Source: Pelomyxa schiedti | Taxonomy: Eukaryota; Protista; Evosea | Direction: 5' to 3' | Assembly: GCA_020536535.1 (NCBI GenBank) | Contig: JAHLWZ010000927.1 | Location: 1 to 45,246, forward strand | DNA length: 45,246 nt | Shown here: piece after piece, positions 8,991 through 39,865 of the stretch | Position numbering within the stretch: the stretch's first letter is position 1 | How the letters are laid out: each line of letters starts with the position of its first letter | The notes under the pieces: model-generated | Databases searched by the model: none | The model's input: the letters and a program-made list of their open reading frames with translations, nothing else | Told to the model about the DNA's origin: nothing | Translations under genes and position numbers: made by a program

Positions 8991-9148
8991 TCACAGTCAG
9001 CTGCTTTCTGAGTCTACAGAGGAAATGAGTGAACCCTGTGGTGATCCTGTGGTTGATACCCTCAGGGCACTGGGTCACTCCCAGAGAACCAGCAAACAAC
9101 CCGGTTGTAGTTCCACGTATTTCACAGAATTACCAAACAAAATTATTA

Positions 9149-10000
9149 ATGGCAACCAATTCATTTTCAGACGAGTGGGAGGCGTCGCTGGTTGCCAGTT
9201 TGGCAGAGAACGACGTGGACCCAGAGGACGTAGACTCCGTGGTCAAACGGGCATATGCCCTATTGCAAATATACCTCGAACCAGTGGGTAGGCTCTTGGC
9301 CAAGTGGAATATAGTGGGGATGGAAACATCTTCTGAACTGATGGTGCAGTATAAAATCGAGAAAGTGCAGAGCACCGTCGAGACTATAACTTCAACTCTT
9401 TCACAGGATGCCCTCGAGATGATGCGCAAGTCCTGTGAGAACTATATGGTTGGCTTAGAAGCCCAGATTGATTTCATCTTGGAATGCATTGAGGCCAAAA
9501 AAGTATCAAACTTACAGGATAGTGAAAGTAACATCTATGTTGTTGGGGTGGAACTACTTTCAATTATTAGTTCCTCCGATCACTTTCACTCCAGTCTGCA
9601 CCAGTTACTCCCAGAGAAGCCAGACATTTTCCATGGGTTGCTTTTTGATAACTCGGTTCCACTTCACCCGATGGAGCAGCATGTTGCTGTGAAGCACTTC
9701 ACCTTTTTGACGCTTCATGACACAAACGACACCTGTATGCGCCTATTTTGGCAGTGGGCACTGGACCACCCCAATATTTTGAGGCCCACTTTCTTCTCAC
9801 TTTCCCCCAATAGATCCTCCTGCCAGGTTGCATTTCCCTTCCTTCCCTTTACTTTGGATGATCACAGAAGCACATGTTCCACTGAACCTCCTTTTGGTTC
9901 TGCAAGTCGTGTCCAACAAGCTTATTACATTTGTGATGCCGTTTACTTCTTGCACAAGCATGGCATAACTCATAGAGATGAGGTTAAAACCACAGAATAT
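9149..10000 (+). pseudogene. Internally deleted, 3'-truncated copy of the dynamin-kinase-patatin gene
   Basis: MATNSFSDEWEASL…DPEDVDSVV matches the 29144 exon and is joined in frame to AYALLQIY…LSQDALEMMRKSCENY…HGITHRD (matches about 31270-32010); similarity is lost just after HRD. Confidence 0.8.
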
Positions 10001-11615
10001 CTCGTTGGGTGCAACCGGACAATTTCACACATAAGTCCGAGTTATGGGTCGCGAACGTTTGTAACCATTTTTTGGTGCTGTTTGTGTAATTTGTGGACAC
10101 TTAATTTTGAGGTTCGCGTCGTTTTTGCCTTGTTTGTGGACACTTTATTTTGAGGTTTGTGTTGTGTTTGTGTGTGGATGAGGGTATGAGAGTGCAGTAT
10201 CAATGAACGCAACGATCTGGAACTATCTGTGAAGCAGAGGAGTTGCTACCATTGGGTAGATGTACCTGAAACTTATACAGATCGGCACCTGCGTACATAA
10301 TCAGATCAGATAAAAAAAAGAAGAAACTACAAATATTATGAGCCCAGGAAGCGTTTCATAGAAATGGAGCATTTGTGGACAGCGGAATAGAGGGCCTGTG
10401 CTTCATCAGCACCAAACTGCTCAAAAGCCCAAGTACACTCTTGGTTGTCCATTTGGAATGGCGATGTACAAAGTTTGTGAATACCTAGAGGGTTTTAATA
10501 AAGCAAAAGAGGTGAGTGAAGAACACGCACATCACCCATTCTGTTTGTTTGGCATGTAACCGCATTGTGGAGGTTGCATAGCATTTTTGACAAAGGAAAT
10601 CTCTATCCATTGATACCCTTGTCCCAGTGACCTTCACACCTGTGGCATGCGGTTTTCTTCTGCAAGGCCACCCTAGCAGTATACAAAACCTTGAATGGGA
10701 TTATGGCTTCATCGATTGTAACATTCCTGAATGTAATCGGCGGTTAGTATGAAATAATCACTGTCAAGAACACAAGGTAGTGAACTTCCAATATAAATAA
10801 TCAACAATCCAGCGGATGGATCTCAGCCTGTCATCTGATCCTGCAACACTCTGTTGAGGTCCCTGAAGGGAAGGAAGGGCTCAGGATACGACGGAAATAA
10901 GGGGAAGAGCATGGAAAAGGGAAGTCCAAGCCTGGCAAATGCTAAAGCACCTGTGCTGCATAAGGATGTTGGTGGGAAAAGGGAAAACAACATCAAGTTG
11001 ATTTTTGCTAAGTCCGGGTATCCTGTCAGCAAGAACTGCTTGCACATACTTGTCGATTGTTTGTGTTGCTGTTGGTGTTGGTTGTTGGGACTTTTTGACA
11101 AATTTATGTGCTTTTTCCAAGTGGTAACTATTGCCGGTTAGTAAATAATTGACTAGAGCTCCTTTTCCCTCTTCCTGGGGCCTCCTTTCCCACATAGTTC
11201 ATCCCTCTCCCTTTTTCTCATCACCACACTCAATAGTACCAGGAACCGTGGGCCACAGCACAGCGAAAACGGGAACCGGACTGAGTATTCTTTTATCTCC
11301 GGTGATCAAGGTACTCAACAATCTCACTGTGGTGCCAAAACCAACCACAGTGTTACCTCACTGTCACCCACAGCTCCATGTCTCAATAAAACTGCAAGCT
11401 GCCACACGGACAGAACGTGGCAGGCTCCCACAGCCAGCACTTGGCTCCCACACAATTTGTCAGCTTCAACCTGAGACGTCGGCTCTCATGCTGGCTGTCA
11501 AACAATTTGCTGGCTGCCACACAACCTGCTGGCTGCCACCCCTTGTGTCAAACACCAGACCGCCGATCCTGAGCGACGATAACGAAAATGACAGCGTTCC
11601 GGTCTGTTGATTATT

Positions 11616-17420: not shown

Positions 17421-17864
17421 GTCATTCCCAGCACTGAGGGTAACCAACACCAGCGTATGGTTGCTTCTTACACTGCTGACCCTCAGCCTGGACAGCAGGG
17501 CCAAGAAGACCACAATCGGAACCACCACCACCATAGCCACAGCCGTCAGCAGCATACCCAGCAACCCCAATCACAACAACAGCGGCTGCAAGCACAAGCA
17601 CAGGCCCTCAACACTTTGCCAGTTCTGTGTATGGCAGCACAGCCCACTGTCATCACCACACCCCCACCACCTTGCACTTACGCACAAGTGGTACCACATC
17701 AGGGAGCCACTGCTGCTGCTCCCCAGGCTCAATCACAGTTGCTGCAACAACTCCATCAAGGGATGTGCCAGAACCGCCAGCAACAGCAGTATCATCACCC
17801 AACGCAATCTCCCAAACAACTGTCTGACAGTGTCTCTTCCTCCCACACCACTCGCGATGTGTAA
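17421..17864 (+). CDS. Gln/His-rich low-complexity exon of an unknown gene
   Basis: Open Q/H-rich frame (…QPGQQGQEDHNRNHHHH…) ending at 17864, convergent with the PARP gene; upstream exons unresolved. Confidence 0.35.
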   Translation, partial: VIPSTEGNQHQRMVASYTADPQPGQQGQEDHNRNHHHHSHSRQQHTQQPQSQQQRLQAQAQALNTLPVLCMAAQPTVITTPPPPCTYAQVVPHQGATAAAPQAQSQLLQQLHQGMCQNRQQQQYHHPTQSPKQLSDSVSSSHTTRDV

Positions 17865-23800: not shown

Positions 23801-24381
23801 CACCAAGGAAGTGCAGAACAAATAGCCGACTTTATGAGAGATCTGAGGCACTCACTCTCTCCCCTTGACGTTACCGGTTTCTTCCTTCCATCCCTTGTGG
23901 ACCCGCGAATTGAGCACACACATACAGAAGTGACTCGGCTTTGCAAGGAAACCGAAGGTGGGAATATTCCCATTGCAGAGTGCCTCATACGACGGAACAG
24001 AATGCTGGAGGCACTGAAATGTGAGCCCAAGTTTTGTGCCAACATCCACCCGACTTGCGTCCGGCTATTCTGCCTCGTCGTCGAGTCCTGCCTCTCCATT
24101 CTCGGTTTGTTTCCTCCCGGCCACGTCACATTTCTTCACGCACAATCTCGCCTGTTTCATGTTCCATTCAGTTAATGCACCAAAACCTGACATCACACAC
24201 AGAGTGCAACCGGCCGCCGTTCCGTGCAATTGAAAAGGAGATCATGACGTGTGCACAGCTCGTGTTTGGATCGTGGTATGACGACGATCACGTGGAATCT
24301 TGCGTCGCCCGCTGCCTCGCCGCAATGGTTGCATCGTTATCCCCTTCTCACCACGGCACCACAACCTTGTCATCGTCGTAG
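20897..24381 (+). CDS. Ankyrin-repeat - coiled coil - UBL-like - TKL kinase
   Basis: Ankyrin units (TALGAACQGGHVDVVRLLL, SPLCLACQGGH, TPLCAACGTG, NPLWHASKNNH) in ORF 20897-22228; later exons give AVKIIITRKYGVD…TDTNRTLSDL (UBL-like), GVGSYGTV, VAVK, HRDLSSNN, DFG, GTPVYVAPQ, DMWE; stop 24381. Exon joins at 22230-22520 are uncertain. Confidence 0.75.
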
Positions 24382-25770
24382 TCACAGTCACTTCTCAGCT
24401 TTCTGTAGTCTACATAGGAAATTGAGTTAACACGACCTGTGTAGTGCTGGAAAGATCCTGTGGCTGATATCCTCAGGGCACTGGGCTACTACGACACTCA
24501 GTTAATCCAGTTGTAAAGAAAAATTGAAGACTGATGAAAACAGAGTTTCTTCACTTACTAAAAAGGGTGCCGAGTGTATGTGCAACAGATGAGTAAATAA
24601 TTCAATTTTCTGGTACAGATTTGACAGTTCCCCTTTAAAAAAAAATTCGAAAATAAATCAGTTTTAATTTTTTTTCCTCTTCTTTTTGGACTTCGACCCA
24701 CTTCCTAACTGGAGTCTCCGCCGTTGTTGTGTTTGGTGAGAATGTGCCGGTCTCATCGGGTGCAGGTGATTTATGAAGACGCCCAAACGATCTTCCTGAA
24801 CCCTTCCATCCCCCATGAGAAAAGGACCAAATGTTATTTTACTGTGAAATGATCAGTCCGGCAACAGATCCAAAAAAAAATCGCATTTTGGGGGATTGAC
24901 GCGTTTGGTGCGGGTCGATGCAGGCACAACATCGAACAGCTGCGTACCACGCGAGAGTAAGCAGTTTGTGTCAGAGAGCAAGTTCCAAGAATCATCGGGG
25001 AACTTGGTTCGGGACATAGCCGGCCATTCACAGGAACGGCCGGAGCGTTCATTCTAATGGCCTTTCCTTGAATCACCCGCCGTTGTACCACAGAAAGATT
25101 GTAAATAGGAATAATAACAAAAATAATTCTTCTTGATAGACACCATATCTGGGTCAAAGGGCGGCTGTTTTTTGGCCTGTCAAGTTCCTGTAAAAACAGC
25201 CGCCCTTTTTTTTGGGCGGCTGTCCTATCAAAACCATGTGCAAAACAGCCACCCAAAGGGGCGGCTGTCTGAAGTACTTCAGGAAGGGGTGGGCATGAAA
25301 GGAAACTGTGTCCCCTTGTGGGCTAGACTATCAAAACAGCACAGGAGCGTGATTAATCGAAGGGTGTTTGTTCTGGCTGGAAAGTCACGGTTACAAACAA
25401 CAGTGTAGTACAACAATAGGGGGAAGTAAAAAGGGGCAGCAACAACAACAGTACTCTGCCTCAGTCTACAGCAACAGATTTGTCCAGTCTCCGTTTTTTC
25501 GAAAACGATCAGAAAAGGCTGTTGGTGTCGCTGTGGGTGTCGGCACCCACGTATGTGTAGGTGTCGAGCGGCGGTGTTGGGAACAACAGCAGCAACAACC
25601 AAGTGAAGGGGGTGAAGGTTTACCCAACAGCGCCGGCGCCCACGCCATCAGCTGTGCCACTGAGGCCTACAACGACGCCAGCCCCTCACCACCAGGGCTG
25701 ACCGGACTCCACGTAATACACCTGCACCTACGACGCCGACGCCGACGACGCCTACACCGCCTACACCTAC

Positions 25771-25876
25771 GCCAACACCACCAACACCACCAACACCACC
25801 AACACCGCCAACACCGCCAACACCGCCAACACCGCCAACACCGCCAACACCGCCAACACCGCCAACACCGCCAACA
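25771..25876. repeat. (CAACACCGC/CAACACCAC)n 9-mer tandem repeat
   Basis: Read directly. Confidence 0.9.
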
Positions 25877-25920
25877 ACACTGACACAAACACACTGAAGA
25901 ACACACAACACACAACACAC

Positions 25921-26028
25921 AACAAGAAACAAGAAACAAGAAATAAGAAACAAGAAACAAGAAACAAGAAACAAGAAACAAGAAACAAGAAACAAGAAAC
26001 AAGAAACAAGAAACAAGAAACAAGAAAC
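25921..26028. repeat. (AAGAAAC)n 7-mer tandem repeat, about 15 units
   Basis: Read directly. Confidence 0.95.
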
Positions 26029-26661
26029 AGAACCCACACTTAACCAGCACACAAACTCTCCCAACATTAATGCCATCCAAGATGCTCCTTTCTTCTCCTC
26101 CCTCCCCTCCACTCACCCCCCATCTCCTGCTTGGCACCAACAAACCAACAACACAAACAACTAATTGGAGATAAGTAATCAAAGAGAAAGGAAAGGTTGC
26201 ACAAGGATAATGCACTGTAACAATACAAAAATTTACCTTGCACTTGTTTGGTGTGAGGTGGAAGCTGTTTTTTCACAAGGGTCCACATATATTCTTCACA
26301 AAACAAAAAAAATTTTCCCCTTAGAACTACCAACTGTCCACCTTGTCTACATGTTGCAGACTCAAACCTGTTAAAAACATTGAAAAAACATGGCTTTTCC
26401 CCATTGGTAAAACAGCCGCCCGGCGGCTGTTTTAATTTTTTTTCCTTATTAAAACAGCCGCCGGGCGGCTGTTTTGAGGGGGCGGCTGGGTGGCTTTTTT
26501 TACAGGAAAGTGAGAGGGAAAAAAACAGCCGCCCTTTGACCCAGATATGCCCCTATCACGCACACAACTCAAATGGGAACGAGAGTCCTATCATTTGGTA
26601 TTAGCACGTCAAGCTAAACACCAAAAACTTTGTGCTAAGGTGCTGAAACAAACACAATTAG

Positions 26662-26840
26662 AAGACCAACATCTTTGAAAAGCCAGTTCTTCATGCACTG
26701 AGGTATGCCAATATTGTGGGATCAACAGCCAAAACCTTCACTGTTAAGAATATGAGAGCTTGGCTTAGAAAGTACAAAATGCCTGTTACTGGATGCAGAA
26801 CCCCTCTCATTAAAAGAATACGAGCTGTAGTTGTTGGATA
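26662..26840 (+). CDS. Terminal exon encoding a SAP-like DNA-binding motif (gene remnant inside the IR element)
   Basis: After acceptor caattag: KTNIFEKPVLHALRYANIVGSTAKTFTVKNMRAWLRKYKMPVTGCRTPLIKRIRAVVVG*, fitting the SAP consensus LTVxELKxxLxxxGLxxSGxKxxLIxRL. Confidence 0.6.
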
Positions 26841-27599
26841 AAAAATTTTTTCGTCTGATTCGGTGCGACAGAGTCGTCAGATCGAAACCGGGAACAGGCG
26901 ATTTTTTTTTTGGATCTGTTGCCGGACTGATCATTTCACAGTAAAATAACATTTGGTCCTTTTCTCATGGGGGACGGAAGGGTTCAGGAAGATCGTTTGG
27001 GCGTCTTCATAAATCACCTGCACCCGATGAGACCGGCACATTCTCACCAAACACAACAACGGCGGAGACTCCAGTTAGGAAGTGTGGCTCAATGAAAAAA
27101 AATAATTCCACAAAACTCACTGTCAACTCAAATCAGTGGCCGAGTTTCTGACAAAATTCCTTTTAAGGGAACTTTGGCACAAAATTATGTTTTCTTCTTC
27201 ACTTGGGACCTTAATAACTCGGAAAATAGAGCAGACCCTCAGGAAAAAAATCCTGGAAGTCATTAAACACATAGGAGAGAGTCCATCCCAGAGATAACAT
27301 ATGTTGGGTGGAACACTGCCGAGACTCAGGGTTGATTTATCAAATTATCAGAAATTCCTTGATTGAAAATGAAGATAATCGTTACGACAAAGCAACAAAT
27401 TTGTGGGAACGGCGAGCTGAGGCGGAGCTCTGGTCAGTGCTGTAATTTCCCCGGGATTTTTTCCCTTTCCCGGAGGGGAGAATTTGGGGAGGGAGGGGAG
27501 AATTCGGGGAGAATGACTCTCCTCAGTCTTTTTGATCATCACTCACTCAATCTTTTCAGTCTCAAACTTGCTGCGACAGCTGAAAAACGCGAAGTCAAA

Positions 27600-28737
27600 G
27601 CGCCCATCAGGATCAAAAAGAGTGTGCATTGGTTGAACCTATGGAGCCAGCTGCAGAGGATCCTGCATGTGTAAGTTGCTGCCTTTGTGGAGATGGAGGA
27701 GGAGGATTCTTTGCTGTTTCTGAGCACAGTGCCACCTGATATTGCATTCCAAAGAGCACAGTGTAGCTTCTTTCCCATTCACAGGGTTTGTGCAATAGCC
27801 ATCAACCAAAGATGTAATGTGTTTGCACCACATACAAGCTCGTTTCACCTTTGGCCAAGAACAAGTATCGTGGATGCATACCTGGGATGTTGTATTGGCT
27901 TCCATTTGAGGAGGAGCAAGTGCTTATTTAACTTCAAAAGTAATGAACAAACATAGTTGTAATGGTAAGCATTATTGAACAGAGCATAAAGAAGCATATC
28001 AAATGTGGCACACCAGTAATATAATGATCGATGGTCCTGACGGATTTGCACAATGATGTGTTTATTTTTGTCCTCAAAGTTATGCACTTTGTTATACCTT
28101 CACCAGGGTGCATTAATATCAAACCAAATAGAATAAAGATTACAAAGATATTGCGATACAGCACTGAACCTCTTTGTTTAGCTTTTCGATCCCAAACCAG
28201 ACGAGTAGTTCTTGTGGTTAAATTTGGGATATTTGTGAGGATGTTAATGATCTTCTTCTTTTGATTTGCTGCAACTTTGGCATAATATGAAAGAGCCATC
28301 AGGTGTGGTGCCTGTGAAAATCACTTATCAAACTTTGAGAGTGTGAATGTCATCTAGTACAGTTTGGTGTGATGGTTGTGTCAATTGTGTTTGCCCACCA
28401 TCTAGCAAAGTGTAAACTTAAAAACAAATAATTGACTTGTACTTTGGTTGGTGCCATCAACAAACACAGATGTAGTTGAAGATGTGGTTGACATTGGAAG
28501 AAAACCAGTGATGGAACCTGAAGAAACAAATGGTATCACAGGGGGAGCAAGGATGAGAGGAGGTGGTGGTTGGGTTGCTCCAAGAAGCCCCACAGTTTGA
28601 GGGGGTGGTTGAAAAAGCTGACTACTCAAGAGTAGGTTGGTTGTTTGAGACTGCACAGGTCGTACCCATTGGATATGAATGATTGGCATGGTTTTCACTG
28701 TCTCCGTATTTTTTAGGCCAGAGACAAGCAAGTGCAT
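27600..28737 (-). CDS. Probable multi-exon gene of unknown function (Pro/Ser-rich 5' part, Cys cluster at 3' end), possibly decayed
   Basis: Fragmentary ORFs with plausible splice sites; CMWCKH…C…CSLEC…HC near 27700-27840. Confidence 0.3.
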
Positions 28738-29143
28738 TTATTTACACAGCTGTCTGGTGTCGGTTATTGTCGTTAAGCAACATGGTAATATGTAAACCAT
28801 TGTGCATTCTAATCTGTGGCCTGCTGACGTCTCAGTGCCGTGCCGGAGGCGATGCGTAATTACGAAGACAAAGATCACTTTTTGATGGTTAGGGGAAGCA
28901 GCAAACGAACAATCAACCATCACTGTTTTTGGAAACGCTCGATAAATTGTCTGACTGAGATTGTTTGTAGATCTCCCCAAATTCTCCCCTCCCCAATCCC
29001 GGGGAGACTTTCGCCAAAGGGATACAACAGGACTGGCTCCGGTGGTTCAGGCACCAAGTTGGCCAATGATATGTGCCAACTTCGGCAACTTTTTGAGGCA
29101 AGTTTTTCCACATTTCACAGAATGACGAGGAAAACGCTCTGAA

Positions 29144-32100
29144 ATGGCAACCAATTCAGTGCCCGCAGACGAGTGGGAGGCGTCGCTGGTTTCTAGTCTC
29201 ACAGAGGACGAATTTGACCCAGAAGACGTGGACGCGGTGGTCCTGGCGTGGCGCTCGCTCCCGCCCACCAGCAGGACCGCCTCTGGCTTCCTCGCCAAAT
29301 TCCCCAATGCTGCTGCGCTGGTCTCCGCGTGTCCCAAGTTGCGCCTCCGAGACGCCCGAGTGGTTACGGAACGCGTGCGCGAATTGTGGGAGGCGAGCGG
29401 GTGGACCGGCGCGGTTTCAAGGGCCGCGGCGCGCCGTGGCTTCGACAGGGTGGTTTTGGGTCGGTTGTGCTCCGCGGTGGCTGAGAGGTTCGACTCTATA
29501 GACGCCTTCGCGTAAGTTGAATACAACTAAAATGGGACATATAAAAATTTAAATAAAATATAAAATTTTCGACATTATTGACGGTGATGTACCCCTTTTT
29601 ATTAAAACTCAAAAAGGTGCGCCATTGCACACCCTGAGCTGGAGGAATTTGGTGCTGTTGGAGCAGAGACTCTGAAAATAGCTCGTACTTTGGTGGCAAA
29701 GAAATCGCTGTCATCACTTTCTAACATATCACGGCTTCGTGAAGAGGCGGAGCAAAAAGTTGCAGAGATTAGGCATCTCTCCAAGGCTGTGACAGATATT
29801 CTCAAGCAGTATTTAGCTGCTTCCGAGTCTGATTCCCATAGCAGCAATTCTCGTCTAAAGGCTGTTATGCTGAAACATCTCAGCTCTGATCCTGCAGCTT
29901 CCCTTCCTGGACCCTCAAGTGAGGAGCTTGTGACTCTCCTGGTGATTGGCCAAACGAATTCCGGCAAGTCTCAGTTCATCAACTCCTTGCTGCAATGCAA
30001 CCTGCTACCTGTCTGGGCCATCTCATGCACAGTATGTATGACTGTCATAAAGTATGGTGTCCAAAAGAAATACCGTCTCGGAACCAGGGAGGCGTCTGGT
30101 TCTATGCAAATCTCTTGGGGGGAATTAGTGAATATACGTGAGACTGCTCCCTCCGGTGACTTCCTCCTGCCAGCAATTGGACGAGACACAAAGGGTGAAG
30201 TGGACCTTAGTGTTACTAACGTTATACTGGAGGTCTTTTGGCCACACCCTTTGTTGCAAGCTGGTGTGCAGCTTGTTGATTCACCAGGAATGCTTGAGTC
30301 ACCTGAGCTTGAGAAGATTGTTTTTGACTATGCGCAAGGGCAACGCCTGGGCGTGATATGCCTGTTTGATTTGGCCACTGGTGGCCTTCCTGCTCACAAG
30401 CACTTCATCACTAAGTTGAACTTGGACCCAGCAACAATCTTCTTTGTTGGAAATAAAGTGGATACAGTTCGGCCATATAATGGACCTATTGACCCTGTAG
30501 ATAAGTTGTTTCACTTCACACAACAAGTCCTCGAGCAGATGGGGGAGCGGTTATATGATAGCCCTGACAATTTCCCCCGGTTTTCTGCGTATTCATCTTT
30601 GGAAGCATACCTTCTCAGTCAAAGTTCTGGAGACCAGGTGGAACCCCTCAAAGAGCCTCAAGCCATATTCTCCTTCAACGCGAAACTGGTGGATTGGATC
30701 AAAGCACTGTTTAATCGCTCGCTAGTCGCTGTGACTTCGCAGCTTCTTGACGCAGTTTGCACCCTTTCATCTGTAAATCTCATTACGTGGAACTACGCCG
30801 AAATAGAGCCGAAATTGCGTGGATGCTGTAAAAACATGAAGCTGGACTTTGAGGCAATGCAAAAGTCCATGATACCGATACTGCAGGGGCATGTCGAGGG
30901 TTTTTGTGAACATGTGTCAAGTGCTGACTCAATAAGAAAGATCAGTGAAAAAGTTACCAATGAACAAAAACAGATTGGAATGCAGCTATTTTCTGATGTG
31001 GACGAAGTAAGTTCCATAGTGAGCTCAGTACTTACCAACTACACGAACGCACTTCAAATGATTACAGCAGATGTAGTGAGAGACCAGTTTTTTGAGTTTT
31101 CCAAAGACTTTTTCAACCTCTTTACTGAGCAGTGTCAAGCAGTTATTCAGAAGTACGAGACTCAGCTAACAACTTTAACATTAGATTTTATCTTTTCAGA
31201 AAAGAGCCACCGTAGATTCTATGGTGGTACAACAGTAGGGTTGATTGCTGCTTTTGAAGCACCTTTTATAGCAGCATTTGCCCTATTAAAAATGTACGTA
31301 TTAACTGTGGCAAAGGTCTTGAAAGTGGGTCATGGGAAACTTTCTGAAGTTCAGACACGTGAACTGATGGTGCAATATAAAGTCAACAAAGTGAAAAGCA
31401 CAATTGCGATGATCACATCAACCCTTTCCCAGGATGCCCTCGAGATGATGCGCAAGTCCTGTGAGAACTATATGGTTGGCTTAGAGGCCCAGATTGATTT
31501 CATCTTGGAATGCATTAAGGCCAAAAAAGTATCAAACCTGCAGGATAGTAACATCTACTTTGTTGGAGTGCAACTACTGTCAATGATTTGTTCCCTCAGG
31601 TCACTTTCACTGCAGTCTGGCCACCAGTTACTCCCAGAGAAACCAGACATTTTCCACGGATTGCTTTTTGACAACTCGGTTCCTCTTTACCCAACAGAGC
31701 AACATGTTGTTGTCAAGAACTTCACCTTTTCCATGCTTTGTGATACAAACCGTACCTGCATGCACTTGTTTCAACAGTGGGCACTGGACCACCCCAATAT
31801 TTTGAGGCCCTCTTTCTTTGCACTTTCTCCTGATAGATCTTCCTGTCAAGTGGCATTTCCCTTCCTTCCCTTCACCTTGGATGAGTACAGAAACACATTT
31901 TCCATAGAACCTCCTTATAGTTCTACAAGTCGTGTCCAACAAGCCTATGATATTTGTGATGCAGTTTACTTCTTGCACAAGCATGGCATAACACACAGAG
32001 ATATCAAACCACAAAATATAATGGTCAATATGCAAGGAACTCCATTTTTGATTGACTTTGGGTGTGCAAAACCGGTTGCACCCCAGAATCTTTCAACTTT

Positions 32101-33913
32101 TACTGGTACACCAGGGTACATAGCCCCAGAGGTGTATGATGGTCGATATGACAACCGTGTTGATGTTTATAGTCTTGGGAGGACACTAACGCAGTACGAA
32201 AACCCAAGTGCTGTGGTGACTCCACCATCTCCACTGAATGATTTGCTCAAGAAGATGTGTATCAGTAACCCTGATTTGCGACCAACTCTTATGGATGTGA
32301 AGACCCAATTAATTGACATTGGAAGGAGGCTGAGCTTGGCCAGACCAGATGGCAAATATAACATCTTAAGTCTTGATGGTGGAGGCATGAGAGGACTTGT
32401 TGAGATAGAAATGCTGATGATGATCGAGAAAGCAACGGGAAAGAAAATTTGGGAACTCTTCCATTTGATTTCAGGCACAAGCACTGGAGGGATTTTAGCA
32501 ATTGCAATTGGCTTGCTTCATGTGGACTTAAATACCCTTAAGCACTTGTATATGACCTTGGGCCCAAAAGTGTTTGGGCACGGGTTTAGCAAAGCACATA
32601 ACGCATTTTCCTTCATGTCATCTCTCAGCTTTCAGCAGTATTCAAGTTCAACTCTAAGGGCTTTACTGTCATTGCACCTTTCTGGCCACAAGTTTCTGGA
32701 CTTTCAGCATTGTATACCGAAAGTATTTGTTACCTCAACACAGATTACAAGCAACATATCAGATATGGTGCTCTTCAGATCTTACCCAATCCCTTTTTAT
32801 GAAGGGCGAAACACAAGTGCTCCACGTAGGTCTGCACCAAACTGCGAATTGATAGATGGAGCGATGGCAACTGCTTCTGCACCAACTTATTTTGAACCTG
32901 TTCACATTGAACAATGTCCCTATATCGATGGAGGCCTGCTTGCAAATAATCCCACACAGGAAGCAATAAATGAGGCAAAGTTGCTGTGGCCGAACGCTCA
33001 TTTAAATCTGTTGGTATCGCTGGGGACTGGAAAGACCACTCAAAACATAGCTGTACCAGCAGAGAAAAACATTTCTCTTTTCCAGCTGGCTGAATCACTT
33101 GTTTCCATAGTAACAGACCCGGAAAAGATACATAGGCAAATACAGCTACAAATGGCAGAAAAGCCAACAGTAACATATGTTCGCTTGAATCCTGAGCTGC
33201 CCATTGATCTTCTGAAGATGGATGAATCCGACAAGGGACACCTAAGACAGATAGTTTCATCTACAAATGTATTTCTGCAGGAATCTGCCGCAGCATTTGC
33301 TCACATTCTCTCTTGCCTTGGAGTTAGTCCTCCTCAAGACGCTCCAAAACCCATACACAAAGGTATCACGGAATGGCACCCACATATGGAATTCCTTTTT
33401 CTCCCAGAGACTTCATCCCAAGACCTACGTCAATGTGTTTCCCGGCACTGTGCACAAATGAACCAGTGCCCCTTTGCTCCAAACGACAACCCAGTTGACT
33501 CCTTGTTCCTCCTCATTACTCATGCCATTCGTTCGGATGGCAATGCCATGGACTTGAGCAAATCAGTGGCAAAGTGGTTTTTACGCAATACTCAGTTACC
33601 TCTTGCAACCGGCAAGTCTCTGGGTGAAAGCTGTTCAAAGTTTTGGAGCACCTGTACTGACGCAACTTTGCTCCTCAGACTAAGTGCGGAATCAATACCG
33701 CATATACTTCCGTGGCTGCTGTATGTTATCGCTAACATTCATCCACAGCTGTGCTTGGTACTTGTAGCTGCCGCGAGGCCGCAATGTGTCCGCTTCGGCA
33801 GTGGCAATGTTGTTGTATCCTTGGCTCTTGATTTTGAAAAGGAACAATCTGAGCCACCAACAGAGAACCCTGAGGATTCCCCTGCTTCACAGTCAGCTAC
33901 CGTGAAGGTGTGA
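29144..33913 (+). CDS. Dynamin-like GTPase - Ser/Thr kinase - patatin phospholipase fusion (1554 aa, single intron 29512-29616)
   Basis: Exons 29144-29511 and 29617-33913 join in phase. G1 GQTNSGKS (29948), G3 DSPG (30278), G4 NKVD (30452); kinase HRDIKPQN (31994), DFG (32054), GTPGYIAPE; patatin DGGGMRG (32375), GTSTG (32474), DGG (32927). Confidence 0.9.
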
Positions 33914-34429: not shown

Positions 34430-37400
34430 CATAGCGGCTTTGGACTTGAAATCAACAAAGGCATATCCCATGGACTGTTGGTGCAAGTCCCGTGCAACAC
34501 AGAGTTGCTGTGTGATGGCAATTTTTACTGTGGTTCCTTGTACTTCCACATTATTGTCTTGGAACAGTTTATGCAGGTCACTGCATTCTACACTGGGGGA
34601 AGGTTGTCAATGAACAGAGTTTTCTGTGAGGGAACCCTGTTCAAGGATACCGTATGTTGAGAAACCTTCGTTCTGAAAAACTTTCGTAGCCGAAAACTTT
34701 CGTTGCTGAAAACTTTGGCGTCTCAGCACCAGGGACGAAAGTTTTGGCACCAGCATTTTCGCGGCTGTGGATGTAGGTGTAGTGGATAGATCGAGACGGA
34801 TAGAAAATCAAAATATGAGCACCGCCTTGGTTGTCCGTCGGCAACAGTGCACGTTGTTGGATATGTGGTCCAGTCCGGTGCACTTGGAAAGCTTTGCCGA
34901 AGTGTCTCTTGACACTCTTAAGAAATCGGCGGAGGTGTTTGGAATGGACCAAAAAAAAGTGGCAATAATAATCCACACACAGCACAAGTTTGGGACCAGG
35001 CAAGGCCTTCTAAATACCAAAAGGTATCACATTACAGGCACTATGGTCCTGTTCACTAACTTATGGAGGTTCCTAAGGACACACAACTCGAAATTGTGAA
35101 AACAATTGTGAGCTCTCATTGCCTTACAATTCCAGAGGTTTAGAGTTGTTTTTCTTTTTTTTTTTTTTGAGTTGATACAATTGTAGTTTCTGCACTCTTC
35201 TCCTCTTGTTAGGCAATTTATTTTACCTGCAACAACAATTCGAACTTGGGTGACTAAGTACAAGAAACTGCTGCTCAAGTACTGGTTTTCAGAGAGCCCA
35301 TGACAATATTGAACTTTGTGCAGCCGGCAAAGGAGACCAGTTGCAGGTTTTAATCCATTGCTACAAACCTGACTTACCTAATGTAGATGGGCCGGCATAC
35401 AACTGATGAACCTAGGGCACCACTCCTAACCGTACAACCTCCACACCTCCCTCAACCATTTCCACAACTTCCGCACCTCCTTCACAGACTCCAATAACCA
35501 TTTCCATAACTTCCGCTTCTCAGTCGATGGACTCGCCCTAACACAACAGCTGTCTCCCATAGTGCGTTATTATCTCCACTTTTGTAATCGCTATTAACAC
35601 AAATCTCCACAGCCTGTTGTTGCTTGCCCAGCACCTGTAGTTTCCATACTGACTGATCCTGTGTGTATACTAGTGTTTGGATTACCTTCTTACATCTAAC
35701 AGGGAAGAATTCTACCGATGGGTACTTCTCTCATGGCAGCGATGACGATGGATACTCTTCCCATGGAAGTGGAATGGACAATCCCAGCCCCATGCTTCCT
35801 CCGCTTTCTGCCACCGATACCTAACCATAGAAAAAGAAATTTTATTTCTATTACTAATTTCTAATCGGCTTCGAAACTTTTGGGACGATCATTTTGGCCA
35901 CGAATCATTTTCGGCAACAAAAGTTTTTGACAACGAAAGTTTTCTGGAACGAAGGTTTCTCAACATACGGTATATCCTGGTCAATCAGTTGTGATAGTGT
36001 TAATATTACCTTTGTAGCAGTGGTTCTCGATGTGCAGGTTCTCCATGAAACACAGAATTTCTGAGAAGAGAAATGCAGAGAGAGTTTGAATGCAGAATGG
36101 ACAGGCATTTCTGGGAACATCTCGTGCAAGTTGTTCTCACTGAGGTGAATCAATGCCCACCCAGGAATGTGCAACAGCTTTCCTGATGATGTTGAGATGC
36201 AGTCTGACTGGAAGCTTCCAGTTTTTGAGTGTTGTTGTGCTGTTGGCTGCTTATCCCAAGATAGACCATGAATGTCTTGTTGAAGAAGTTGTGAAGTGCC
36301 TCTCCATCAATTGCGTTCCTGATCAAGATTTCACCAACATGGTGACTGAACTCTGCTGAGAAAAATGAGTGAGTGATAAAGTAGAATAACACACGCACAC
36401 ACCATAGGAACTGGTGGATGCTGAGGAGTTCAACAGCACTTGATGGTTATCTGCATTTTTTTTCCTGGAGTGGCAAACAAATTTCTAAATTTGTGCTGCC
36501 ATTGGCATGTTAGTCTGCAGATTGGAAATTGTTATTTTGGATTTGGGAGTATAGAGCGTGTACTGCACATACAGAGACAATTTTGAGGTCATCCTGTCAT
36601 CTTCTGGGGATACAGTAGGCAGGAAGTGAGACAAAGTCACCCATACAACATTCTGCAAATGAGCAATTTGCCCAAGCTCATTGTATTCAAGTTCTACATC
36701 ATGCTGCAGCTTCAAGGCAATCTTTATTTTCGTTAGTCAGCTGCACAAGCAAATGGGAATGCATACCTATTTGATAGCTGTGATCTCCAGGCATCTCTAT
36801 TCTGGCTACCATTGTAATTTGCTGCTGAACCAGCACTGGCATGACAATATGACAATTCTGTTGAGAGATTCACGCCATTGGAAGGCATCCAAGCACTCAG
36901 GCATTCTCTCTTTGGCGAAATTATGGTCATTTATTAGGCGGAGATCAAGGAATTGTTCTTACCTGACACTGGAGGAATCAGCACTGTTTTCAAAGGCGTT
37001 TTCACATCGTTTTGAAGCTCCTGCAATGGAATAAGTTATTCTGGCAATAGTAACCAGGAAAGGAATACCTGGAATGGCGCAGGAACTCTGGAAAGCAAAT
37101 CTGAAGTACAGCAAACTCTGTTGCAATTCGAGGACTGATTTCCAATGCTACATATCGGCCGTATATGACAGCAATGCATTCTTCATCTATGGCAACAATG
37201 TTAGGCAATGCCAAGCTACACCCACTTCAAGGACCACTTGCACTGAAGTCCCTAGGAAGCTCATAATCTCACAAAGTCCCTTTCTGGACAAACAGTTAAA
37301 TACTGAGAGATCTGTGACTGGAACACACCAAAATCGAGGCAAGAGTACTTCTCTACATCTCATAGTTCATTCCATAGCCTGCAAGCATCACCTACTGCAT

Positions 37401-39865
37401 TTGCCAAAGAAAAATCATCATCATCATGGCGCAGCCATCAAACTCAAGCATGAATTCCAACACCTGCATGCAATTAATTTACACACCAACATTCCTACAT
37501 ACCTGCAAGTCACACCAATTCACTGCAAATTCGGCCCTCATGCAAATTCTCTCCCTCTCTGCCCGAGAAACTCCCATGGCTGTGGCGAGTTCCTTCTGTT
37601 CCTGGGATAGCTTGGACTCGGCCAAACCAGATTCTTCAACAAGACTCTGGTGTGATTTCAGGGCCTCCCTTGATATTATCAGTTGTATGGCCGATAAAGC
37701 AGTGTAAAGTCTCTTCCAAGAAACTTTGTTTCACTGAACTTTCAACAACCAAGGATGATGATACAGCAGCTTTACAATGAGAAACCATTGACTTCAGTTG
37801 GAGAAGCCAGTGGATGTCATGCAAGTCCTCCCATGTTACCTTGATGATGTTTTCACTTGGTGGGTCTGGCCACTTTCTTCTATGTGTGATGGTGGATTGT
37901 TGATGGAGAGTGCTGCATGCTTCCCCTGTTGGTGACTTGTTGATTTGAGGGCAGCAATTCTGTGAGTGAGGTTGCACCAATCCCCAATTGCCTTTATCCC
38001 CAGTCTTTTAAGGTCACTGTGATTGAGATGGATGAACGCCCAACCTGGAATCATCAACTGTGACTTTGGTGAACCTGGCAATGGTTTCTGCCAACAGGTC
38101 TGTGAACCCTTCACACTTCAGCCAGTTGATGACTTGGTCAGCACTCCATAATGTGGCAACAGACGCAGCAGTAAACTTGGAGTTGCTACTACTTGCAGAT
38201 GGATTAGGAAAATGCAAGGAACCCAATGTGTGGACATTCTCGATAATGTGACAGACAGCCTTTCTGTGCAACAGGTTGTGGAGCCCAAGCTGCTGCAGAT
38301 CCTCATCGGCAAGTTGTTCAAATGCTTCCCCATCGATTTTATTCCTCAGGAAAGAGTGCTTAAGTTCCTCTTCCCAACTCCTTTCTATTGCAATCCTTGC
38401 TGAATCCTCATCTGAATGATCACCTCAAAAAGTGGAGTGAGGAATATGAAAAAACAGTGCATAGAAACTTACCTTGAAGTGGGGAACAAAGTGACAAGAA
38501 ATCCATCTCAGGAAGGAGGAGATTTGCAACATCTTCTTTTGCAAGTCCTTGCAGAGATTTATTTGAGGCAGCCTGCAGGAGTCTCTGAAGGTTACTTTCA
38601 GCCAGTACCAACTCTCTGTTGACGTTTTCTTTCTCTTTCAGTAGCCACCATAAAACGCAGGTGTGTGCCTTGGCACCCTCCAAGGCATTATTAGAGAGTT
38701 TCTTGGTCTTGGAAAAATCTATTTCAGCCTTCACCATCTCTTCATCACATTGTTTCATTAGTGTTTTCATTGAAGTGACTTGTCCACGAAGTTCTGCATG
38801 CTTTGTAAGAGCTTTCTTTGTGGAAGTGCATCTTGCCTCCGCTTTTTCATGGCTGCATGCAATGGCATTTTTTGCTGAATCTCTGCAGAGTTCAAGTGTT
38901 GGCAGCCACTTTGAGGTGCTGTCTTGCATTTCCACACTTGAAGTCTGTTGAAGATTGTAAGTACAGGAGGGAAAAGGTGGTGTTTTCCAATCAATCTTTC
39001 CAAAATCCATTGCCTTTTGCCTTGATACCTTTTGTCCACTCTGGCTTGCAGTACTTCATTGGAAAGAATTTCTTTGATGTGGTTTTCTTCCCTTTCATTC
39101 AGTTCTGGATACCCTGTGTCTAGTAGTGCCATTGGTTTCACATCCAAATGTTCTTTAATGGCTACTTCTTGCGCATTTTCTCCTGTGGTAGAACTCTCAA
39201 AAAAAGCCTTCACTATAGGGAGATTCAGTGTTGAAAGATTGTCTCGAACCCTCAGGAATTGTTCTACCAGCACAAAGAAGCTTTTCAACCACCTCAATGT
39301 GCCCTTTGGCACCAGTGAGCAACACTGGTGTTAAAGAGGTGCCACACACTGGAGTGTTGACATCCATTGGCGTTGTTCTGATGAGGTGCTCAACGATATC
39401 TACAAACCCCTTCTCACAAGCAGTATGCAGCACTGTACGCTCTTTCCAGGTTATATTCAAGTCTGCAGCTTTGGTGAGGAGAAGCTGAACAATAGAAGTG
39501 TTGCCGTGATAGCAGGCAATATACAATGGCATTCCCCCATCACTTGCTTTGTTTGCATCAGAGTTGCCTTTTGTGAGCAGGGCATCAACCACGGCAAGGT
39601 GACCCTTCTTGCAGGCAAAATACAGTGGTGTGTATCCACCATTCAACCTGTTTACATCAGGTCTTGCTTTGCAACCGCTGTGTTCCCATAGAAGGACGCA
39701 AGCCACAGCGGCTCCTCGGCCTGCCACTGGGTCAGTGCCAAGTGAGAGCAGCGAAGTAAGGGCCATGGCGGCGTCGGAGGCCAGCCAACGGCCCCTCACG
39801 GCGTCCTGTAGCTTCCGCACCAAATCCAGTGGCACCTCAACAGCATTTGTACACGCTCTCTCCAT
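34430..39865 (-). pseudogene. Decayed ankyrin - coiled coil - SAM,SAM - coiled coil - SAM,SAM - RRM gene, interrupted by a transposon
   Basis: Ankyrins TPLYFACKKGH, PLYIACYHGN, TVLHTACEKGF; SAMs IDGEAFEQLADEDLQQLGL, WSADQVINWL…IPGWAFIHLNHSDLKRLGI, IDGEALHNF…LGI, IPGWALIHLSENNL; RRM TLFIDNLP…GYAFVDFKS. Several frameshifts and stops. Confidence 0.7.
34650..35970. mobile_element. Non-autonomous Tc1/mariner-superfamily (Tc2/pogo-like CCGTA ends) element, TA TSD
   Basis: TIR CCGTATGTTGAGAAACCTTCGTTC at 34650 and inverted ending at 35970; TA at 34648-49 and 35971-72; repeated AAAACTTTCGT subterminal motifs at both ends; no transposase recognised. Confidence 0.85.

What the first reader, a model, noticed from the sequence alone, without database searches (positions are those of the whole stretch)
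29144..33913. Single-chain dynamin-like GTPase - kinase - patatin phospholipase
Sequence: intact G1/G3/G4 motifs of the bacterial-dynamin/mitofusin type, a long helical stalk, a kinase, a patatin with glycine loop and Ser-Asp dyad motifs (GTSTG, DGG), and an unknown C-terminal domain of about 180 aa. Established: dynamin-like GTPases (Mx, GBP-related, bacterial DLPs) act in antiviral defence; patatins are cell-killing effectors in CBASS (CapV) and fungal NLRs; as I recall, animal DSTYK pairs a dynamin-like N-terminus with a kinase. Inference: a membrane-assembling sensor/switch that triggers a lipase (programmed death or vacuole rupture). I know of no description of the three-enzyme fusion.
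Basis: partly seen in the sequence, partly recalled or inferred. Interest (0 to 1): 0.87.

Follow-up and report, generated by a model that had tools for sequence, protein, structure and literature searches.

The report
Amoeba dynamin-kinase-patatin lipase fusion protein
A gene of the anaerobic amoeba Pelomyxa schiedti really does join a membrane-binding dynamin-like GTPase, an atypical protein kinase and a patatin phospholipase in one 1554-residue chain. I found this combination in no other organism, and its nearest relatives in animals carry immune-type domains.

Summary
Window 29144-33913 (+) is one two-exon gene (105-nt GTAAGT...AG intron at 29512-29616) encoding 1554 aa. The window is contig JAHLWZ010000927.1 of Pelomyxa schiedti.

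Domain order:
- N-terminal helical region.
- BDLP/mitofusin-type GTPase with G1-G4 intact, then a helical stalk with a hydrophobic tip.
- Protein kinase: beta3 Lys, HRD, DFG and APE present; no glycine loop, no alphaC Glu, shortened C-lobe.
- Patatin with GGGMRG, GTSTG and DGG.
- An unassignable tail of about 210 aa.

A 35%-identical paralogue on another contig has the same collinear layout. It keeps the patatin triad but has lost the kinase HRD and DFG. Two further copies are truncated.

The GTPase groups (99/96 support) with animal Dynamin_N-kinase proteins. Some amphioxus members of that family also carry CARD+TIR or a trypsin-like domain. The patatin falls in the eukaryotic iPLA2beta/pPLAI clade and folds like CapV and iPLA2beta.

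No protein with this three-enzyme layout turned up outside Pelomyxa. The gene itself is absent from the protein databases I searched.

Most likely mechanism (inferred): GTP-driven assembly on a membrane activates the lipase, with the kinase-like domain acting as the coupling switch. An immune or cell-death role is plausible but not shown.

The parts
29144..29511 (+). Exon 1: start codon and the first 122 codons plus 2 bases. This N-terminal region has no recognisable family.
   Evidence: ORF and sequence. No Pfam or PDB match. Conserved in the L001 copy (73-97% aa) and in the partial copy at 9149-9244.
29512..29616 (+). Spliceosomal intron of 105 nt: GTAAGT donor, AG acceptor, AT-rich, frame-preserving.
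   Evidence: Read directly from the sequence. A gap of about the same size lies at the same place in the L001 copy.
29617..33913 (+). Exon 2, including the stop codon. Read from 29618 it gives a 1431-aa piece. Full-length residue number = piece number + 123.
   Evidence: Uninterrupted translation.
29918..30652 (+). Dynamin-like GTPase domain of the BDLP/mitofusin type. G1 29948-29971, G2 Thr 30029-30031, G3 30278-30289, G4 30452-30463.
   Evidence: Pfam Dynamin_N 1.6e-13. BDLP 2j68 at 7e-12. Motif positions. Conserved columns. AF2 pLDDT 85-95.
30653..31621 (+). Helical stalk (neck and trunk bundles): long helices at residues 347-434, 436-457, 464-522, 528-567, 577-638 and 644-668 of the piece.
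   Evidence: AF2 model. Foldseek full-length matches to BDLP, IniA, Campylobacter DLP1/2, SynDLP, Drp1, dynamin and MxB.
31229..31327 (+). Hydrophobic segment (residues 538-570 of the piece) running into the loop of the 528-567 / 577-638 helical hairpin. Candidate membrane-inserting paddle.
   Evidence: Kyte-Doolittle scan. Position in the AF2 model. Less hydrophobic in the paralogue.
31655..32332 (+). Atypical protein-kinase domain. Has beta3 Lys (VVVK, 31706), HRDIKPQN (31994), DFG (32054), APE (32123), DVYSLG and the subdomain XI Arg. Lacks the Gly-rich loop and the alphaC Glu, and has a shortened C-lobe.
   Evidence: Pfam Pkinase 7.4e-26, or 1.2e-27 on the isolated piece, covering profile positions 57-188 only. 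Alignment A3.
32342..33280 (+). Patatin-like phospholipase domain. Oxyanion loop GGGMRG 32378-32395, nucleophile GTSTG 32474-32488, Asp of the dyad in DGG 32927-32935.
   Evidence: Pfam Patatin 4.5e-23. PADLOC CBASS phospholipase effector model 1.2e-50 over its full length. iPLA2beta 6aun 6e-23 and CapV 4e-17. AF2 pLDDT above 90. Foldseek AbCapV 5e-18 (TM 0.73), iPLA2beta 1e-16. Tree.
33281..33910 (+). C-terminal tail of about 210 aa with no detectable relative. Predicted helical at low confidence. Contains a hydrophobic stretch at residues 1366-1386 of the piece.
   Evidence: No Pfam hit even at E up to 10. Not alignable with the paralogue's tail. pLDDT 30-50. Hydrophobicity scan.
9111..10027 (+). 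Partial paralogous copy inside the same window. The promoter-proximal part and first 33 codons are joined directly to the equivalent of residues 553-821 (end of stalk to kinase HRD). It has no GTPase and no patatin.
   Evidence: tblastn 68-73% aa. blastn 76-85% nt, within a collinear duplicated block: 7.6-10.0 kb matches 20.9-32.0 kb. Annotated as the 201-aa protein P0084.

Best explanation
The gene, called DKP1 here, encodes a self-contained, membrane-targeted, nucleotide-switched phospholipase.

Shown:
- One chain carries a BDLP/mitofusin-type GTPase with a complete G1-G4 set and a helical stalk ending in a hydrophobic tip.
- A kinase-fold domain follows directly.
- Only about 10 residues later comes a catalytically complete patatin lipase of the iPLA2beta/CapV structural type.
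- The GTPase-stalk-kinase-fold-patatin order is kept in a paralogue only 35% identical, so the order is maintained by selection.

Inferred mechanism:
1. GTP binding opens the dynamin-like module. This lets the paddle bind a target membrane and the G domains pair, as in BDLP, mitofusin and DynA.
2. Assembly brings the kinase-patatin units together.
3. The kinase-fold domain acts mainly as a dimerising or allosteric coupler, possibly with autophosphorylation in DKP1. This is the arrangement seen in IRE1, RNase L and MLKL. I favour it because the paralogue keeps the fold but has lost HRD and DFG.
4. Oligomerisation opens the patatin active site, as shown for CapV and CapE filaments and the iPLA2beta dimer. 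The bound membrane is then hydrolysed locally.

Inferred role: conflict-related, meaning attack on the membrane around an intracellular bacterium or virus factory, or host-cell suicide. A regulated housekeeping role in membrane remodelling is nearly as likely.
For: Domains, motifs and folds.

The fusion is real:
- A single 4.3-kb exon spans all three enzymes.
- An independent paralogue on contig JAHLWZ010000682.1 is collinear over residues 50-1221 at 35-42% identity.

Pattern of constraint:
- The patatin is the best conserved part of the paralogue pair (46% identity over residues 905-1225 against 35-36% overall), with all catalytic motifs kept.
- In the paralogue the kinase HRD has become LKI and DFG has become NYF. 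The G1 and G4 motifs are partly degenerate.

Kinship of the GTPase: it groups with animal Dynamin_N-kinase proteins at UFboot 99 / SH-aLRT 96 after long branches were removed. That family also occurs as CARD+TIR+Dynamin_N+Pkinase and as Dynamin_N+Pkinase+Trypsin_2 in amphioxus.

Family turnover within Pelomyxa: one intact gene, one diverged copy, one copy cut off where a Ty3/gypsy-like sequence begins, and one internally deleted copy in a segmental duplication.

Precedents from the literature:
- CapV is activated by filament formation and then disrupts membranes (PMC12480259).
- The bacterial dynamin-like protein DynA needs membrane binding for phage defence (PMC8844932, PMC12998192).
Against: - No biochemical, expression or infection data exist for this protein.
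- The patatin sits in the eukaryotic iPLA2beta/pPLAI clade. As I recall, characterised members of that clade are regulated cellular lipases rather than suicide effectors.
- The kinase lacks the glycine loop and the alphaC Glu, so even DKP1 may not phosphorylate anything.
- The hydrophobic paddle is not conserved in the paralogue.
- The stalk and kinase parts of the models have only moderate to poor confidence.
- The grouping with the animal proteins joins long branches and rests on about 250 columns.
- The kinase domain shows no special affinity to the animal family's kinases.
- No dynamin-patatin linkage was found in the flanking DNA (at most 5 kb a side, often less) of the 80 best bacterial patatin loci.
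Confidence: 0.5

Rival explanations
1. A housekeeping, regulated iPLA2-type lipase. The usual N-terminal scaffold (ankyrin repeats in animal iPLA2beta, LRR/ARM in plant pPLAI) has been replaced by a dynamin-like membrane anchor. The protein remodels phagosome, vacuole or symbiosome membranes in a large phagotrophic amoeba full of endosymbionts, without any killing function.
For: - The patatin lies inside the eukaryotic iPLA2beta/pPLAI/Naegleria/fungal clade with SH-aLRT 99. iPLA2beta is the best solved match by sequence.
- Members of that clade recovered here carry varied N-terminal scaffolds.
- Pelomyxa schiedti lives with several prokaryotic endosymbionts (PMC10579272).
Against: - The family was found only in Pelomyxa among the proteins searched, which is unlike a core membrane-traffic function.
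- The paralogues are highly diverged and several copies are decayed.
- The nearest GTPase relatives include fusions to CARD/TIR and to a protease.
Confidence: 0.33
2. A signalling kinase of the DSTYK-like kind in which phosphorylation is the main output. The patatin domain would be an accessory that produces lipid messengers or serves as a membrane tether.
For: - Collinearity with animal Dynamin_N-stalk-kinase proteins and the tree grouping.
- DKP1 keeps the beta3 Lys, HRD, DFG and APE.
Against: - The paralogue has lost HRD and DFG yet keeps the whole patatin machinery, so the lipase is the constrained output, not the kinase.
- DKP1 lacks the Gly-rich loop and the alphaC Glu, and has a shortened C-lobe without the usual substrate-docking region.
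Confidence: 0.1
3. A non-functional accident: a recent chimeric fusion, an assembly artefact of the single-cell genome, or a pseudogene with no biological role.
For: - The assembly comes from single-cell genomics (PMC8887013).
- The gene is absent from the protein databases.
- Related copies are broken.
Against: - 1431 codons are open in one exon.
- All catalytic motifs of three enzymes are intact.
- A paralogue on another contig has the same order at only 35% identity and is open over 256 + 1053 codons, apart from one frame change inside a T6 run. This requires long purifying selection on the fused layout.
Confidence: 0.05

Closest known systems
Animal Dynamin_N-stalk-Pkinase proteins (about 1000 aa; amphioxus, Ptychodera, Pecten, Lymnaea, Biomphalaria). 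NCBI names one member 'dual serine/threonine and tyrosine protein kinase-like', i.e. DSTYK-like.
   Same: Same order of BDLP-type GTPase, helical stalk and kinase. BLASTP is collinear from residue 101 to 891. The GTPase domains form one clade at 99/96 support. The module accepts extra domains at either end: CARD+TIR, or Trypsin_2.
   Different: None of them has a patatin or the Pelomyxa tail. Their kinases match the full Pfam profile, whereas the Pelomyxa kinase lacks the glycine loop, the alphaC Glu and part of the C-lobe. Overall identity is only about 21%. Vertebrate DSTYK itself was not tested.
Bacterial dynamin-like proteins and mitofusins (Nostoc BDLP, IniA, DynA, Campylobacter DLP1/2, MFN1/2)
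   Same: G1-G4 motifs, a GTPase followed by neck and trunk helical bundles, and a hydrophobic membrane-binding element near the tip of the trunk. These are the best sequence and fold matches.
   Different: Those proteins end after the stalk and act through membrane tethering, fusion or repair. None of those matched carries a kinase-plus-lipase extension. Two kinase-BDLP proteins found here have the kinase at the N-terminus instead.
Calcium-independent phospholipase A2 beta (PLA2G6) and plant pPLAI-type patatins
   Same: Same patatin clade. 31-33% identity over the whole catalytic domain. GGGxRG, GxSxG and DGG motifs. As in those proteins, the catalytic domain sits C-terminal to a large regulatory scaffold.
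   Different: The scaffold here is a GTPase plus kinase fold, not ankyrin or LRR/ARM repeats.
CBASS phospholipase effectors CapV and CapE
   Same: Best structural matches (TM 0.73-0.81). Strong profile match over the full effector length (PADLOC 1.2e-50). They set the precedent for activation by higher-order assembly followed by membrane disruption (PMC12480259).
   Different: CapV and CapE are stand-alone bacterial proteins switched on by cyclic nucleotides from a neighbouring CD-NTase. The Pelomyxa domain scores below the NCBIfam CBASS_lipase cut-off (139 against 200 bits) and branches with eukaryotic patatins rather than the bacterial ones sampled.
Kinase or pseudokinase domains coupled to effectors (IRE1, RNase L, MLKL) and fungal Pkinase-patatin proteins such as Xylaria P0006
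   Same: A kinase-fold domain lies immediately upstream of an effector domain. A family member tolerates loss of the catalytic residues. P0006 shows that kinase-patatin adjacency occurs elsewhere.
   Different: The resemblance to IRE1, RNase L and MLKL is one of logic only, recalled from established knowledge and not tested here. P0006 has no dynamin-like part, and its patatin is not the sister of the Pelomyxa pair.

Membership tests
Dynamin superfamily, BDLP/mitofusin branch | Large GTPase domain with G1 GxxxxGKS/T, G2 Thr, G3 DxxG and G4 N/TKxD | tested here: met
   GQTNSGKS, T138, DSPG and NKVD are present. Pfam Dynamin_N scores 51.5 bits against a cut-off of 27. BDLP 2j68 at 7e-12.
Dynamin superfamily, BDLP/mitofusin branch | Helical neck and trunk stalk following (and partly preceding) the GTPase | tested here: met
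   AF2 model, mean pLDDT 72.7. Foldseek aligns 624-654 columns to BDLP at E 3.5e-17; further hits are IniA, MFN1, DLP1/2 and SynDLP. TM scores are low (about 0.3), as expected for hinged helical bundles.
Dynamin superfamily, BDLP/mitofusin branch | Membrane-binding paddle or transmembrane hairpin at the stalk tip | tested here: inconclusive
   A hydrophobic stretch at 538-570 runs into the tip loop of a helical hairpin. It is not conserved in the paralogue.
Dynamin superfamily, BDLP/mitofusin branch | Nucleotide-dependent self-assembly and stimulated GTP hydrolysis | not testable with these tools
   Needs purified protein.
Eukaryotic-type protein kinases | Catalytic loop HRDxKxxN, Mg-binding DFG, beta3 Lys and APE | tested here: met
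   HRDIKPQN, DFG, VVVK and APE are present. Pfam Pkinase scores 91.5 bits against a cut-off of 31.7.
Eukaryotic-type protein kinases | Gly-rich loop GxGxxG and the alphaC Glu that pairs with the beta3 Lys | tested here: not met
   Only one Gly remains in the loop, and the alphaC position holds His. There is also a gap of about 25-30 residues between alphaF and alphaH. The Pfam match covers profile positions 57-188 only.
Patatin-like phospholipases (PNPLA), iPLA2beta/pPLAI clade | Oxyanion loop GGGxRG, nucleophile elbow GxSxG, Asp of the dyad in DGG/DGA | tested here: met
   GGGMRG, GTSTG and DGG are present. These columns are invariant or nearly so in alignments A4 and A6.
Patatin-like phospholipases (PNPLA), iPLA2beta/pPLAI clade | Patatin fold and placement among iPLA2beta-like sequences | tested here: met
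   pLDDT above 90. Foldseek: CapV, iPLA2beta, CapE and patatin, TM 0.7-0.8 normalised to the small targets. Tree: inside the eukaryotic clade with SH-aLRT 99.
CBASS effector CapV | Score above the NCBIfam CBASS_lipase equivalog cut-off | tested here: not met
   139.3 bits against a cut-off of 200.
CBASS effector CapV | Stand-alone protein encoded next to a CD-NTase and activated by a cyclic nucleotide | tested here: not met
   Here the domain is embedded in a 1554-aa eukaryotic protein. The ORFs scanned in the window gave no nucleotidyltransferase family. Ligand activation cannot be tested.
Animal Dynamin_N-kinase (DSTYK-like) family | Collinear GTPase-stalk-kinase layout and a GTPase that groups with the family | tested here: met
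   BLASTP collinear over 101-891 at 1e-19. One clade at 99/96 support after removal of long branches.
Animal Dynamin_N-kinase (DSTYK-like) family | Kinase domain specifically related to the family's kinases; homology to vertebrate DSTYK itself | tested here: inconclusive
   Kinase scores to family members (44-49 bits) are no better than to unrelated bacterial-type kinases (up to 63 bits). No vertebrate DSTYK sequence was available. Only an NCBI name links the family to DSTYK.
Fungal or animal NLR/STAND death proteins with patatin | NACHT or NB-ARC NTPase plus a repeat sensor | tested here: not met
   No such Pfam family in the protein.

The most novel reading that the evidence does not exclude
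The dynamin-like GTPase plus kinase pair is an old module shared by Amoebozoa and animals, to which human DSTYK would belong. It works as a membrane-surveillance switch of cell-autonomous immunity and is wired to interchangeable outputs: a patatin lipase in Pelomyxa, and CARD/TIR adaptors or a trypsin-like protease in amphioxus. DKP1 would then be the first single-chain sensor-switch-executioner of this kind. It would give a direct handle on what the DSTYK N-terminus does.
Probability: 0.2. Interest if true: 0.85.

Novelty: new variant of a known kind. Interest (0 to 1): 0.62.

Why it matters
All three enzymes are well-known families, but I found their union in one chain in no other organism and in no paper. 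It suggests a simple, testable design: a membrane-assembling GTPase that carries its own lipase.

It also draws attention to a little-noticed family of dynamin-like-kinase proteins. These occur in amoebae and invertebrates and combine with immune-type domains (CARD, TIR, protease). The family may include DSTYK, which papers read here link to human urinary-tract malformation and spastic paraparesis SPG23 and describe as poorly understood.

If the mechanism holds, it extends the rule that patatin effectors are activated by oligomerisation from bacterial CBASS to a eukaryote. It would also add a new branch to dynamin-superfamily immunity, alongside Mx, GBP and DynA.

Tried and rejected
- **Whole-protein homologue search.** It returned only single-domain hits and even missed the 35%-identical paralogue, so its negative result is weak. 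Domain-wise searches were needed.
- **Pattern scans.** Scans of JGI metagenome contigs and IMG/VR viral contigs with the two-paralogue alignment found no relative. These scans use only two short peptide patterns, so sensitivity is low. A giant-virus origin therefore has no support.
- **Prokaryotic dynamin-patatin gene pairs.** None of the 80 best bacterial patatin loci holds a dynamin-like, kinase or tail homologue in its flanking DNA, which is at most 5 kb a side and often less.
- **Recent bacterial (CBASS) origin of the patatin.** Rejected by the tree.
- **Helix-hairpin-helix-like N-terminus.** This was my own impression of exon 1. It found no support in Pfam or PDB searches and is dropped.
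- **First combined alignment (A1).** MAFFT placed the kinase-only rows under the patatin, so A1 was discarded. A4 without those rows was used instead, which left the kinase part of the model poorly supported.
- **Paralogue break.** The break in the L003 paralogue was first taken for an intron. It is a frame change inside a run of six T.
- **DSTYK.** Literature searches for a dynamin-like N-terminus gave nothing. The original 'Dusty kinase' paper is not held. P0227 has no close solved structure. A search from the Lymnaea protein found only unnamed relatives.
- **dN/dS.** DKP1 against the two truncated copies gave 0.46 and 0.36. This is intermediate and not decisive.
- **Public gene calls.** A look-up meant to show the public gene calls around 29-34 kb failed because the ORF tried is not a recorded product.

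Full report
**What is at the coordinates**

The window is a eukaryotic contig. Long ORFs are sparse, and the neighbouring genes encode ankyrin-repeat, PARP, MORN-kinase, RhoGAP-SH3 and B-box proteins. It is identical to contig JAHLWZ010000927.1 (45,246 bp) of assembly GCA_020536535.1. The proteins of that assembly are named Pelomyxa schiedti, an anaerobic archamoeba sequenced by single-cell genomics (PMC8887013).

The finding's coordinates are exactly one gene.
- ATG at 29144.
- Exon 1 runs to 29511.
- A 105-nt AT-rich intron with a GTAAGT donor and an AG acceptor spans 29512-29616 and keeps the frame.
- Exon 2 runs from 29617 to the stop at 33911-33913.

The product is 1554 aa. Residue numbers below refer to the 1431-aa exon-2 piece; add 123 for full-length numbering. 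The same exon-intron layout appears in a paralogous copy on another contig.

**The three enzymes are real**

Pfam gives Dynamin_N (1.6e-13), Pkinase (7.4e-26) and Patatin (4.5e-23), all above the curated thresholds.

*GTPase.* It has G1 GQTNSGKS, G2 Thr138, G3 DSPG and G4 NKVD. Its best solved relatives by sequence are Nostoc BDLP (7e-12), IniA and mitofusin. An AlphaFold2 model of residues 1-690, built on 77 aligned dynamin-like sequences, has mean pLDDT 72.7. It shows a confident GTPase core followed by six long helices. Foldseek aligns it over 624-654 columns to BDLP (3.5e-17), then to IniA, mitofusin-1, Campylobacter DLP1/2, SynDLP, Drp1, dynamin and MxB. A strongly hydrophobic stretch (538-570) runs into the tip loop of one helical hairpin. 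As I recall, that is where BDLP has its membrane paddle.

*Kinase.* It keeps the beta3 Lys, HRDIKPQN, DFG, APE, DVYSLG and the subdomain XI Arg. It has only one Gly left of the GxGxxG loop, a His where the alphaC Glu should be, and about 25-30 residues missing between alphaF and alphaH. It may bind nucleotide, but it is not a textbook active kinase.

*Patatin.* The domain (909-1221) has GGGMRG, GTSTG and DGG. It matches PADLOC's CBASS phospholipase effector model end to end (1.2e-50) and iPLA2beta (6e-23) and CapV (4e-17) among solved structures. It is modelled at pLDDT above 90. Foldseek hits are A. baumannii CapV filaments, iPLA2beta, CapE filaments and potato patatin, with TM 0.7-0.8 normalised to the small targets.

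*Tail.* The last 210 residues or so have no match in Pfam even at E up to 10. The model there is helical but at pLDDT 30-50. I leave them unassigned.

**The fusion is not an artefact**

All three enzymes lie in one uninterrupted 4.3-kb exon.

A second Pelomyxa contig (L003, JAHLWZ010000682.1) carries a paralogue, called DKP2 here. It is collinear with residues 50-1221 at 35-42% identity. The public annotation splits DKP2 into two proteins. One is a 169-aa 'hypothetical protein' with Dynamin_N. The other is a 1350-aa 'calcium-independent phospholipase A2-gamma'. The split sits at a frame change inside a run of six T at L003 10494-10499. Everything else is open over 256 + 1053 codons. At this divergence, that requires long purifying selection on the fused order.

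The pattern of conservation is informative.
- The patatin is the best conserved part (46% identity over residues 905-1225 against 35-36% overall), with every catalytic motif kept.
- The kinase HRD has become LKI and DFG has become NYF, and Pfam no longer detects a kinase there.
- G1 has lost its first Gly and G4 its Lys. The paddle region is less hydrophobic.
- The tails of the two paralogues are unrelated.

So the lipase is the constrained output. The kinase fold can serve without catalysis.

Two further copies are wrecks.
- L001 matches the N-terminus up to residue 407 at 85-90% identity, with frame changes. It then runs into Ty3/gypsy-type reverse-transcriptase sequence.
- The window itself holds an internally deleted copy at 9111-10027. 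It lies inside a collinear, deletion-riddled duplicate (7.6-10.0 kb) of the 20.9-32.0 kb block.

**Distribution**

I ran a full HMMER search of residues 1-690 against 1.84 billion cluster representatives. It found only the Pelomyxa copies as close relatives. All other hits share at most 35% identity over the matched stretches, which in most cases cover little more than the GTPase domain. None of the 150 listed hits has a patatin or the tail.

A patatin-focused search of proteins 787-2504 aa long found DKP2. After it came plant LRR/ARM-patatins, Eimeria, Naegleria and vertebrate iPLA2beta. None of the 120 listed hits has Dynamin_N.

DKP1 itself gave no self-hit in either database. It seems not to be annotated as a protein. 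These searches are not exhaustive: only the best 150 of 713 and 120 of 372 hits were visible.

**Where the parts come from**

In a tree of the GTPase domain, the Pelomyxa proteins group with animal Dynamin_N-stalk-kinase proteins. Support is SH-aLRT 95 in a quick tree. It rises to UFboot 99 / SH-aLRT 96 in a careful tree built after removing the longest branches and the near-copy.

These animal proteins are about 1000 aa and come from amphioxus (many paralogues), Ptychodera, Pecten, Lymnaea and Biomphalaria. BLASTP aligns DKP1 residues 101-891 collinearly with one of them. NCBI names one amphioxus member 'dual serine/threonine and tyrosine protein kinase-like'. I could not test a vertebrate DSTYK, and I found no paper linking DSTYK to dynamin.

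Amphioxus members of this family also occur as CARD+TIR+Dynamin_N+Pkinase (P0357) and as Dynamin_N+Pkinase+Trypsin_2 (P0155). The kinase domain alone shows no special affinity to this family, so a single origin of the GTPase-kinase pair is likely but not proven.

The patatin falls inside a eukaryotic clade (animal iPLA2beta, plant pPLAI-type, Naegleria, Eimeria, fungal proteins) with SH-aLRT 99. Nearly all of the 40 bacterial relatives sampled fall outside that clade. The protein therefore looks assembled from eukaryotic modules, not from a recent CBASS transfer.

**How it most likely works**

Shown: the anatomy and the constraint pattern described above.

Inferred:
1. GTP binding opens the BDLP-like module.
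2. The paddle binds a membrane and the G domains pair.
3. The kinase-fold domain sits only about 10 residues upstream of the patatin. It couples assembly to the lipase by dimerisation or allostery, perhaps with autophosphorylation in DKP1.
4. The patatin active site opens on oligomerisation and hydrolyses the bound membrane.

Precedents:
- CapV is inactive as a dimer or tetramer. It becomes active as a cGAMP-induced filament that disrupts membranes (PMC12480259).
- CapE filaments are among the closest folds.
- DynA needs membrane binding for phage defence (PMC8844932, PMC12998192).
- IRE1, RNase L and MLKL use kinase or pseudokinase folds next to effectors. This rests on established knowledge and was not tested here.

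The physiological role is less certain. A conflict-related role is favoured by three things: the lineage restriction, the turnover of copies, and the CARD/TIR/protease company kept by the nearest GTPase relatives. Such a role would mean attack on membranes around intracellular microbes, or suicide. A regulated housekeeping iPLA2 with a novel membrane anchor is nearly as likely, given the patatin's clade and the biology of an amoeba packed with endosymbionts (PMC10579272).

**Verdict**

- The architecture is a new variant built from known families, so far seen only in Pelomyxa.
- The most valuable by-product is the dynamin-like-kinase family with interchangeable immune-type partners, and its possible link to DSTYK.

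Noticed in passing
window 7632-10027 versus 20931-32019: A collinear segmental duplication with large deletions. 7745-9074 matches 23135-24485 (88%, a kinase gene). 9111-9244 matches 29106-29242 (76%). 9334-10000 matches 31360-32019 (85%). It created the truncated DKP copy (ORF 9029-10153), which is annotated as the 201-aa protein P0084.
   Followed up: partly
window 24699-24884 and 26898-27084: A 187-bp inverted repeat, 98.9% identical. It flanks about 2 kb of A-rich DNA whose ORFs have no Pfam match. It could be the ends of a mobile element or a recent palindromic rearrangement.
   Followed up: no
window 13486-13701 / 16779-16995 and 34647-34712 / 35908-35973: Two further inverted repeats, of 226 bp (81%) and 66 bp (88%), of unknown meaning.
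   Followed up: no
L001 (JAHLWZ010000433.1) 600-2891: The public gene model P0081 (Pelo_5400) runs from a frame-shifted DKP copy straight into Ty3/gypsy-type reverse-transcriptase sequence. It is therefore a chimera of a pseudogene and a retroelement.
   Followed up: partly
L003 (JAHLWZ010000682.1) 15513-17844, minus strand: A 601-aa SIR2-domain gene lies directly downstream of the paralogue DKP2, and an 1849-aa DENN/WD40 protein lies upstream. SIR2 domains are NAD-consuming effectors in several defence systems, so the neighbourhood may deserve a look.
   Followed up: no
P0357 and P0155 (Branchiostoma), relatives found: Amphioxus proteins with CARD+TIR+Dynamin_N+Pkinase (1469 aa) and with Dynamin_N+Pkinase+Trypsin_2 (1790 aa). 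The dynamin-kinase module is combined with innate-immunity adaptor and protease domains, and the family has many amphioxus paralogues.
   Followed up: partly
P0159 and P0179 (Logan assemblies): Proteins of about 2060 aa with Dynamin_N, a bacterial dynamin helical domain, AAA, a STAND/NB-ARC NTPase and TPR repeats. This is another dynamin-like GTPase fused to conflict-type modules.
   Followed up: no
P0001, P0007, P0010, P0346 (hits): A separate family with a patatin at residues 670-1000, preceded by an N-terminal zinc finger, a P-loop and a RING finger. It occurs in fungi and in an unnamed assembly. I saw no detectable dynamin relationship.
   Followed up: partly
window 2143-5769(-), 6243-7288(-), 11616-15051(-), 17921-19968+(-), 20897-22225(+), 39200-40201(-): Neighbouring genes encode B-box, RhoGAP-SH3, MORN-kinase, PARP-domain and ankyrin-repeat proteins. 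This domain mix is often seen in rapidly evolving signalling or defence gene sets.
   Followed up: no
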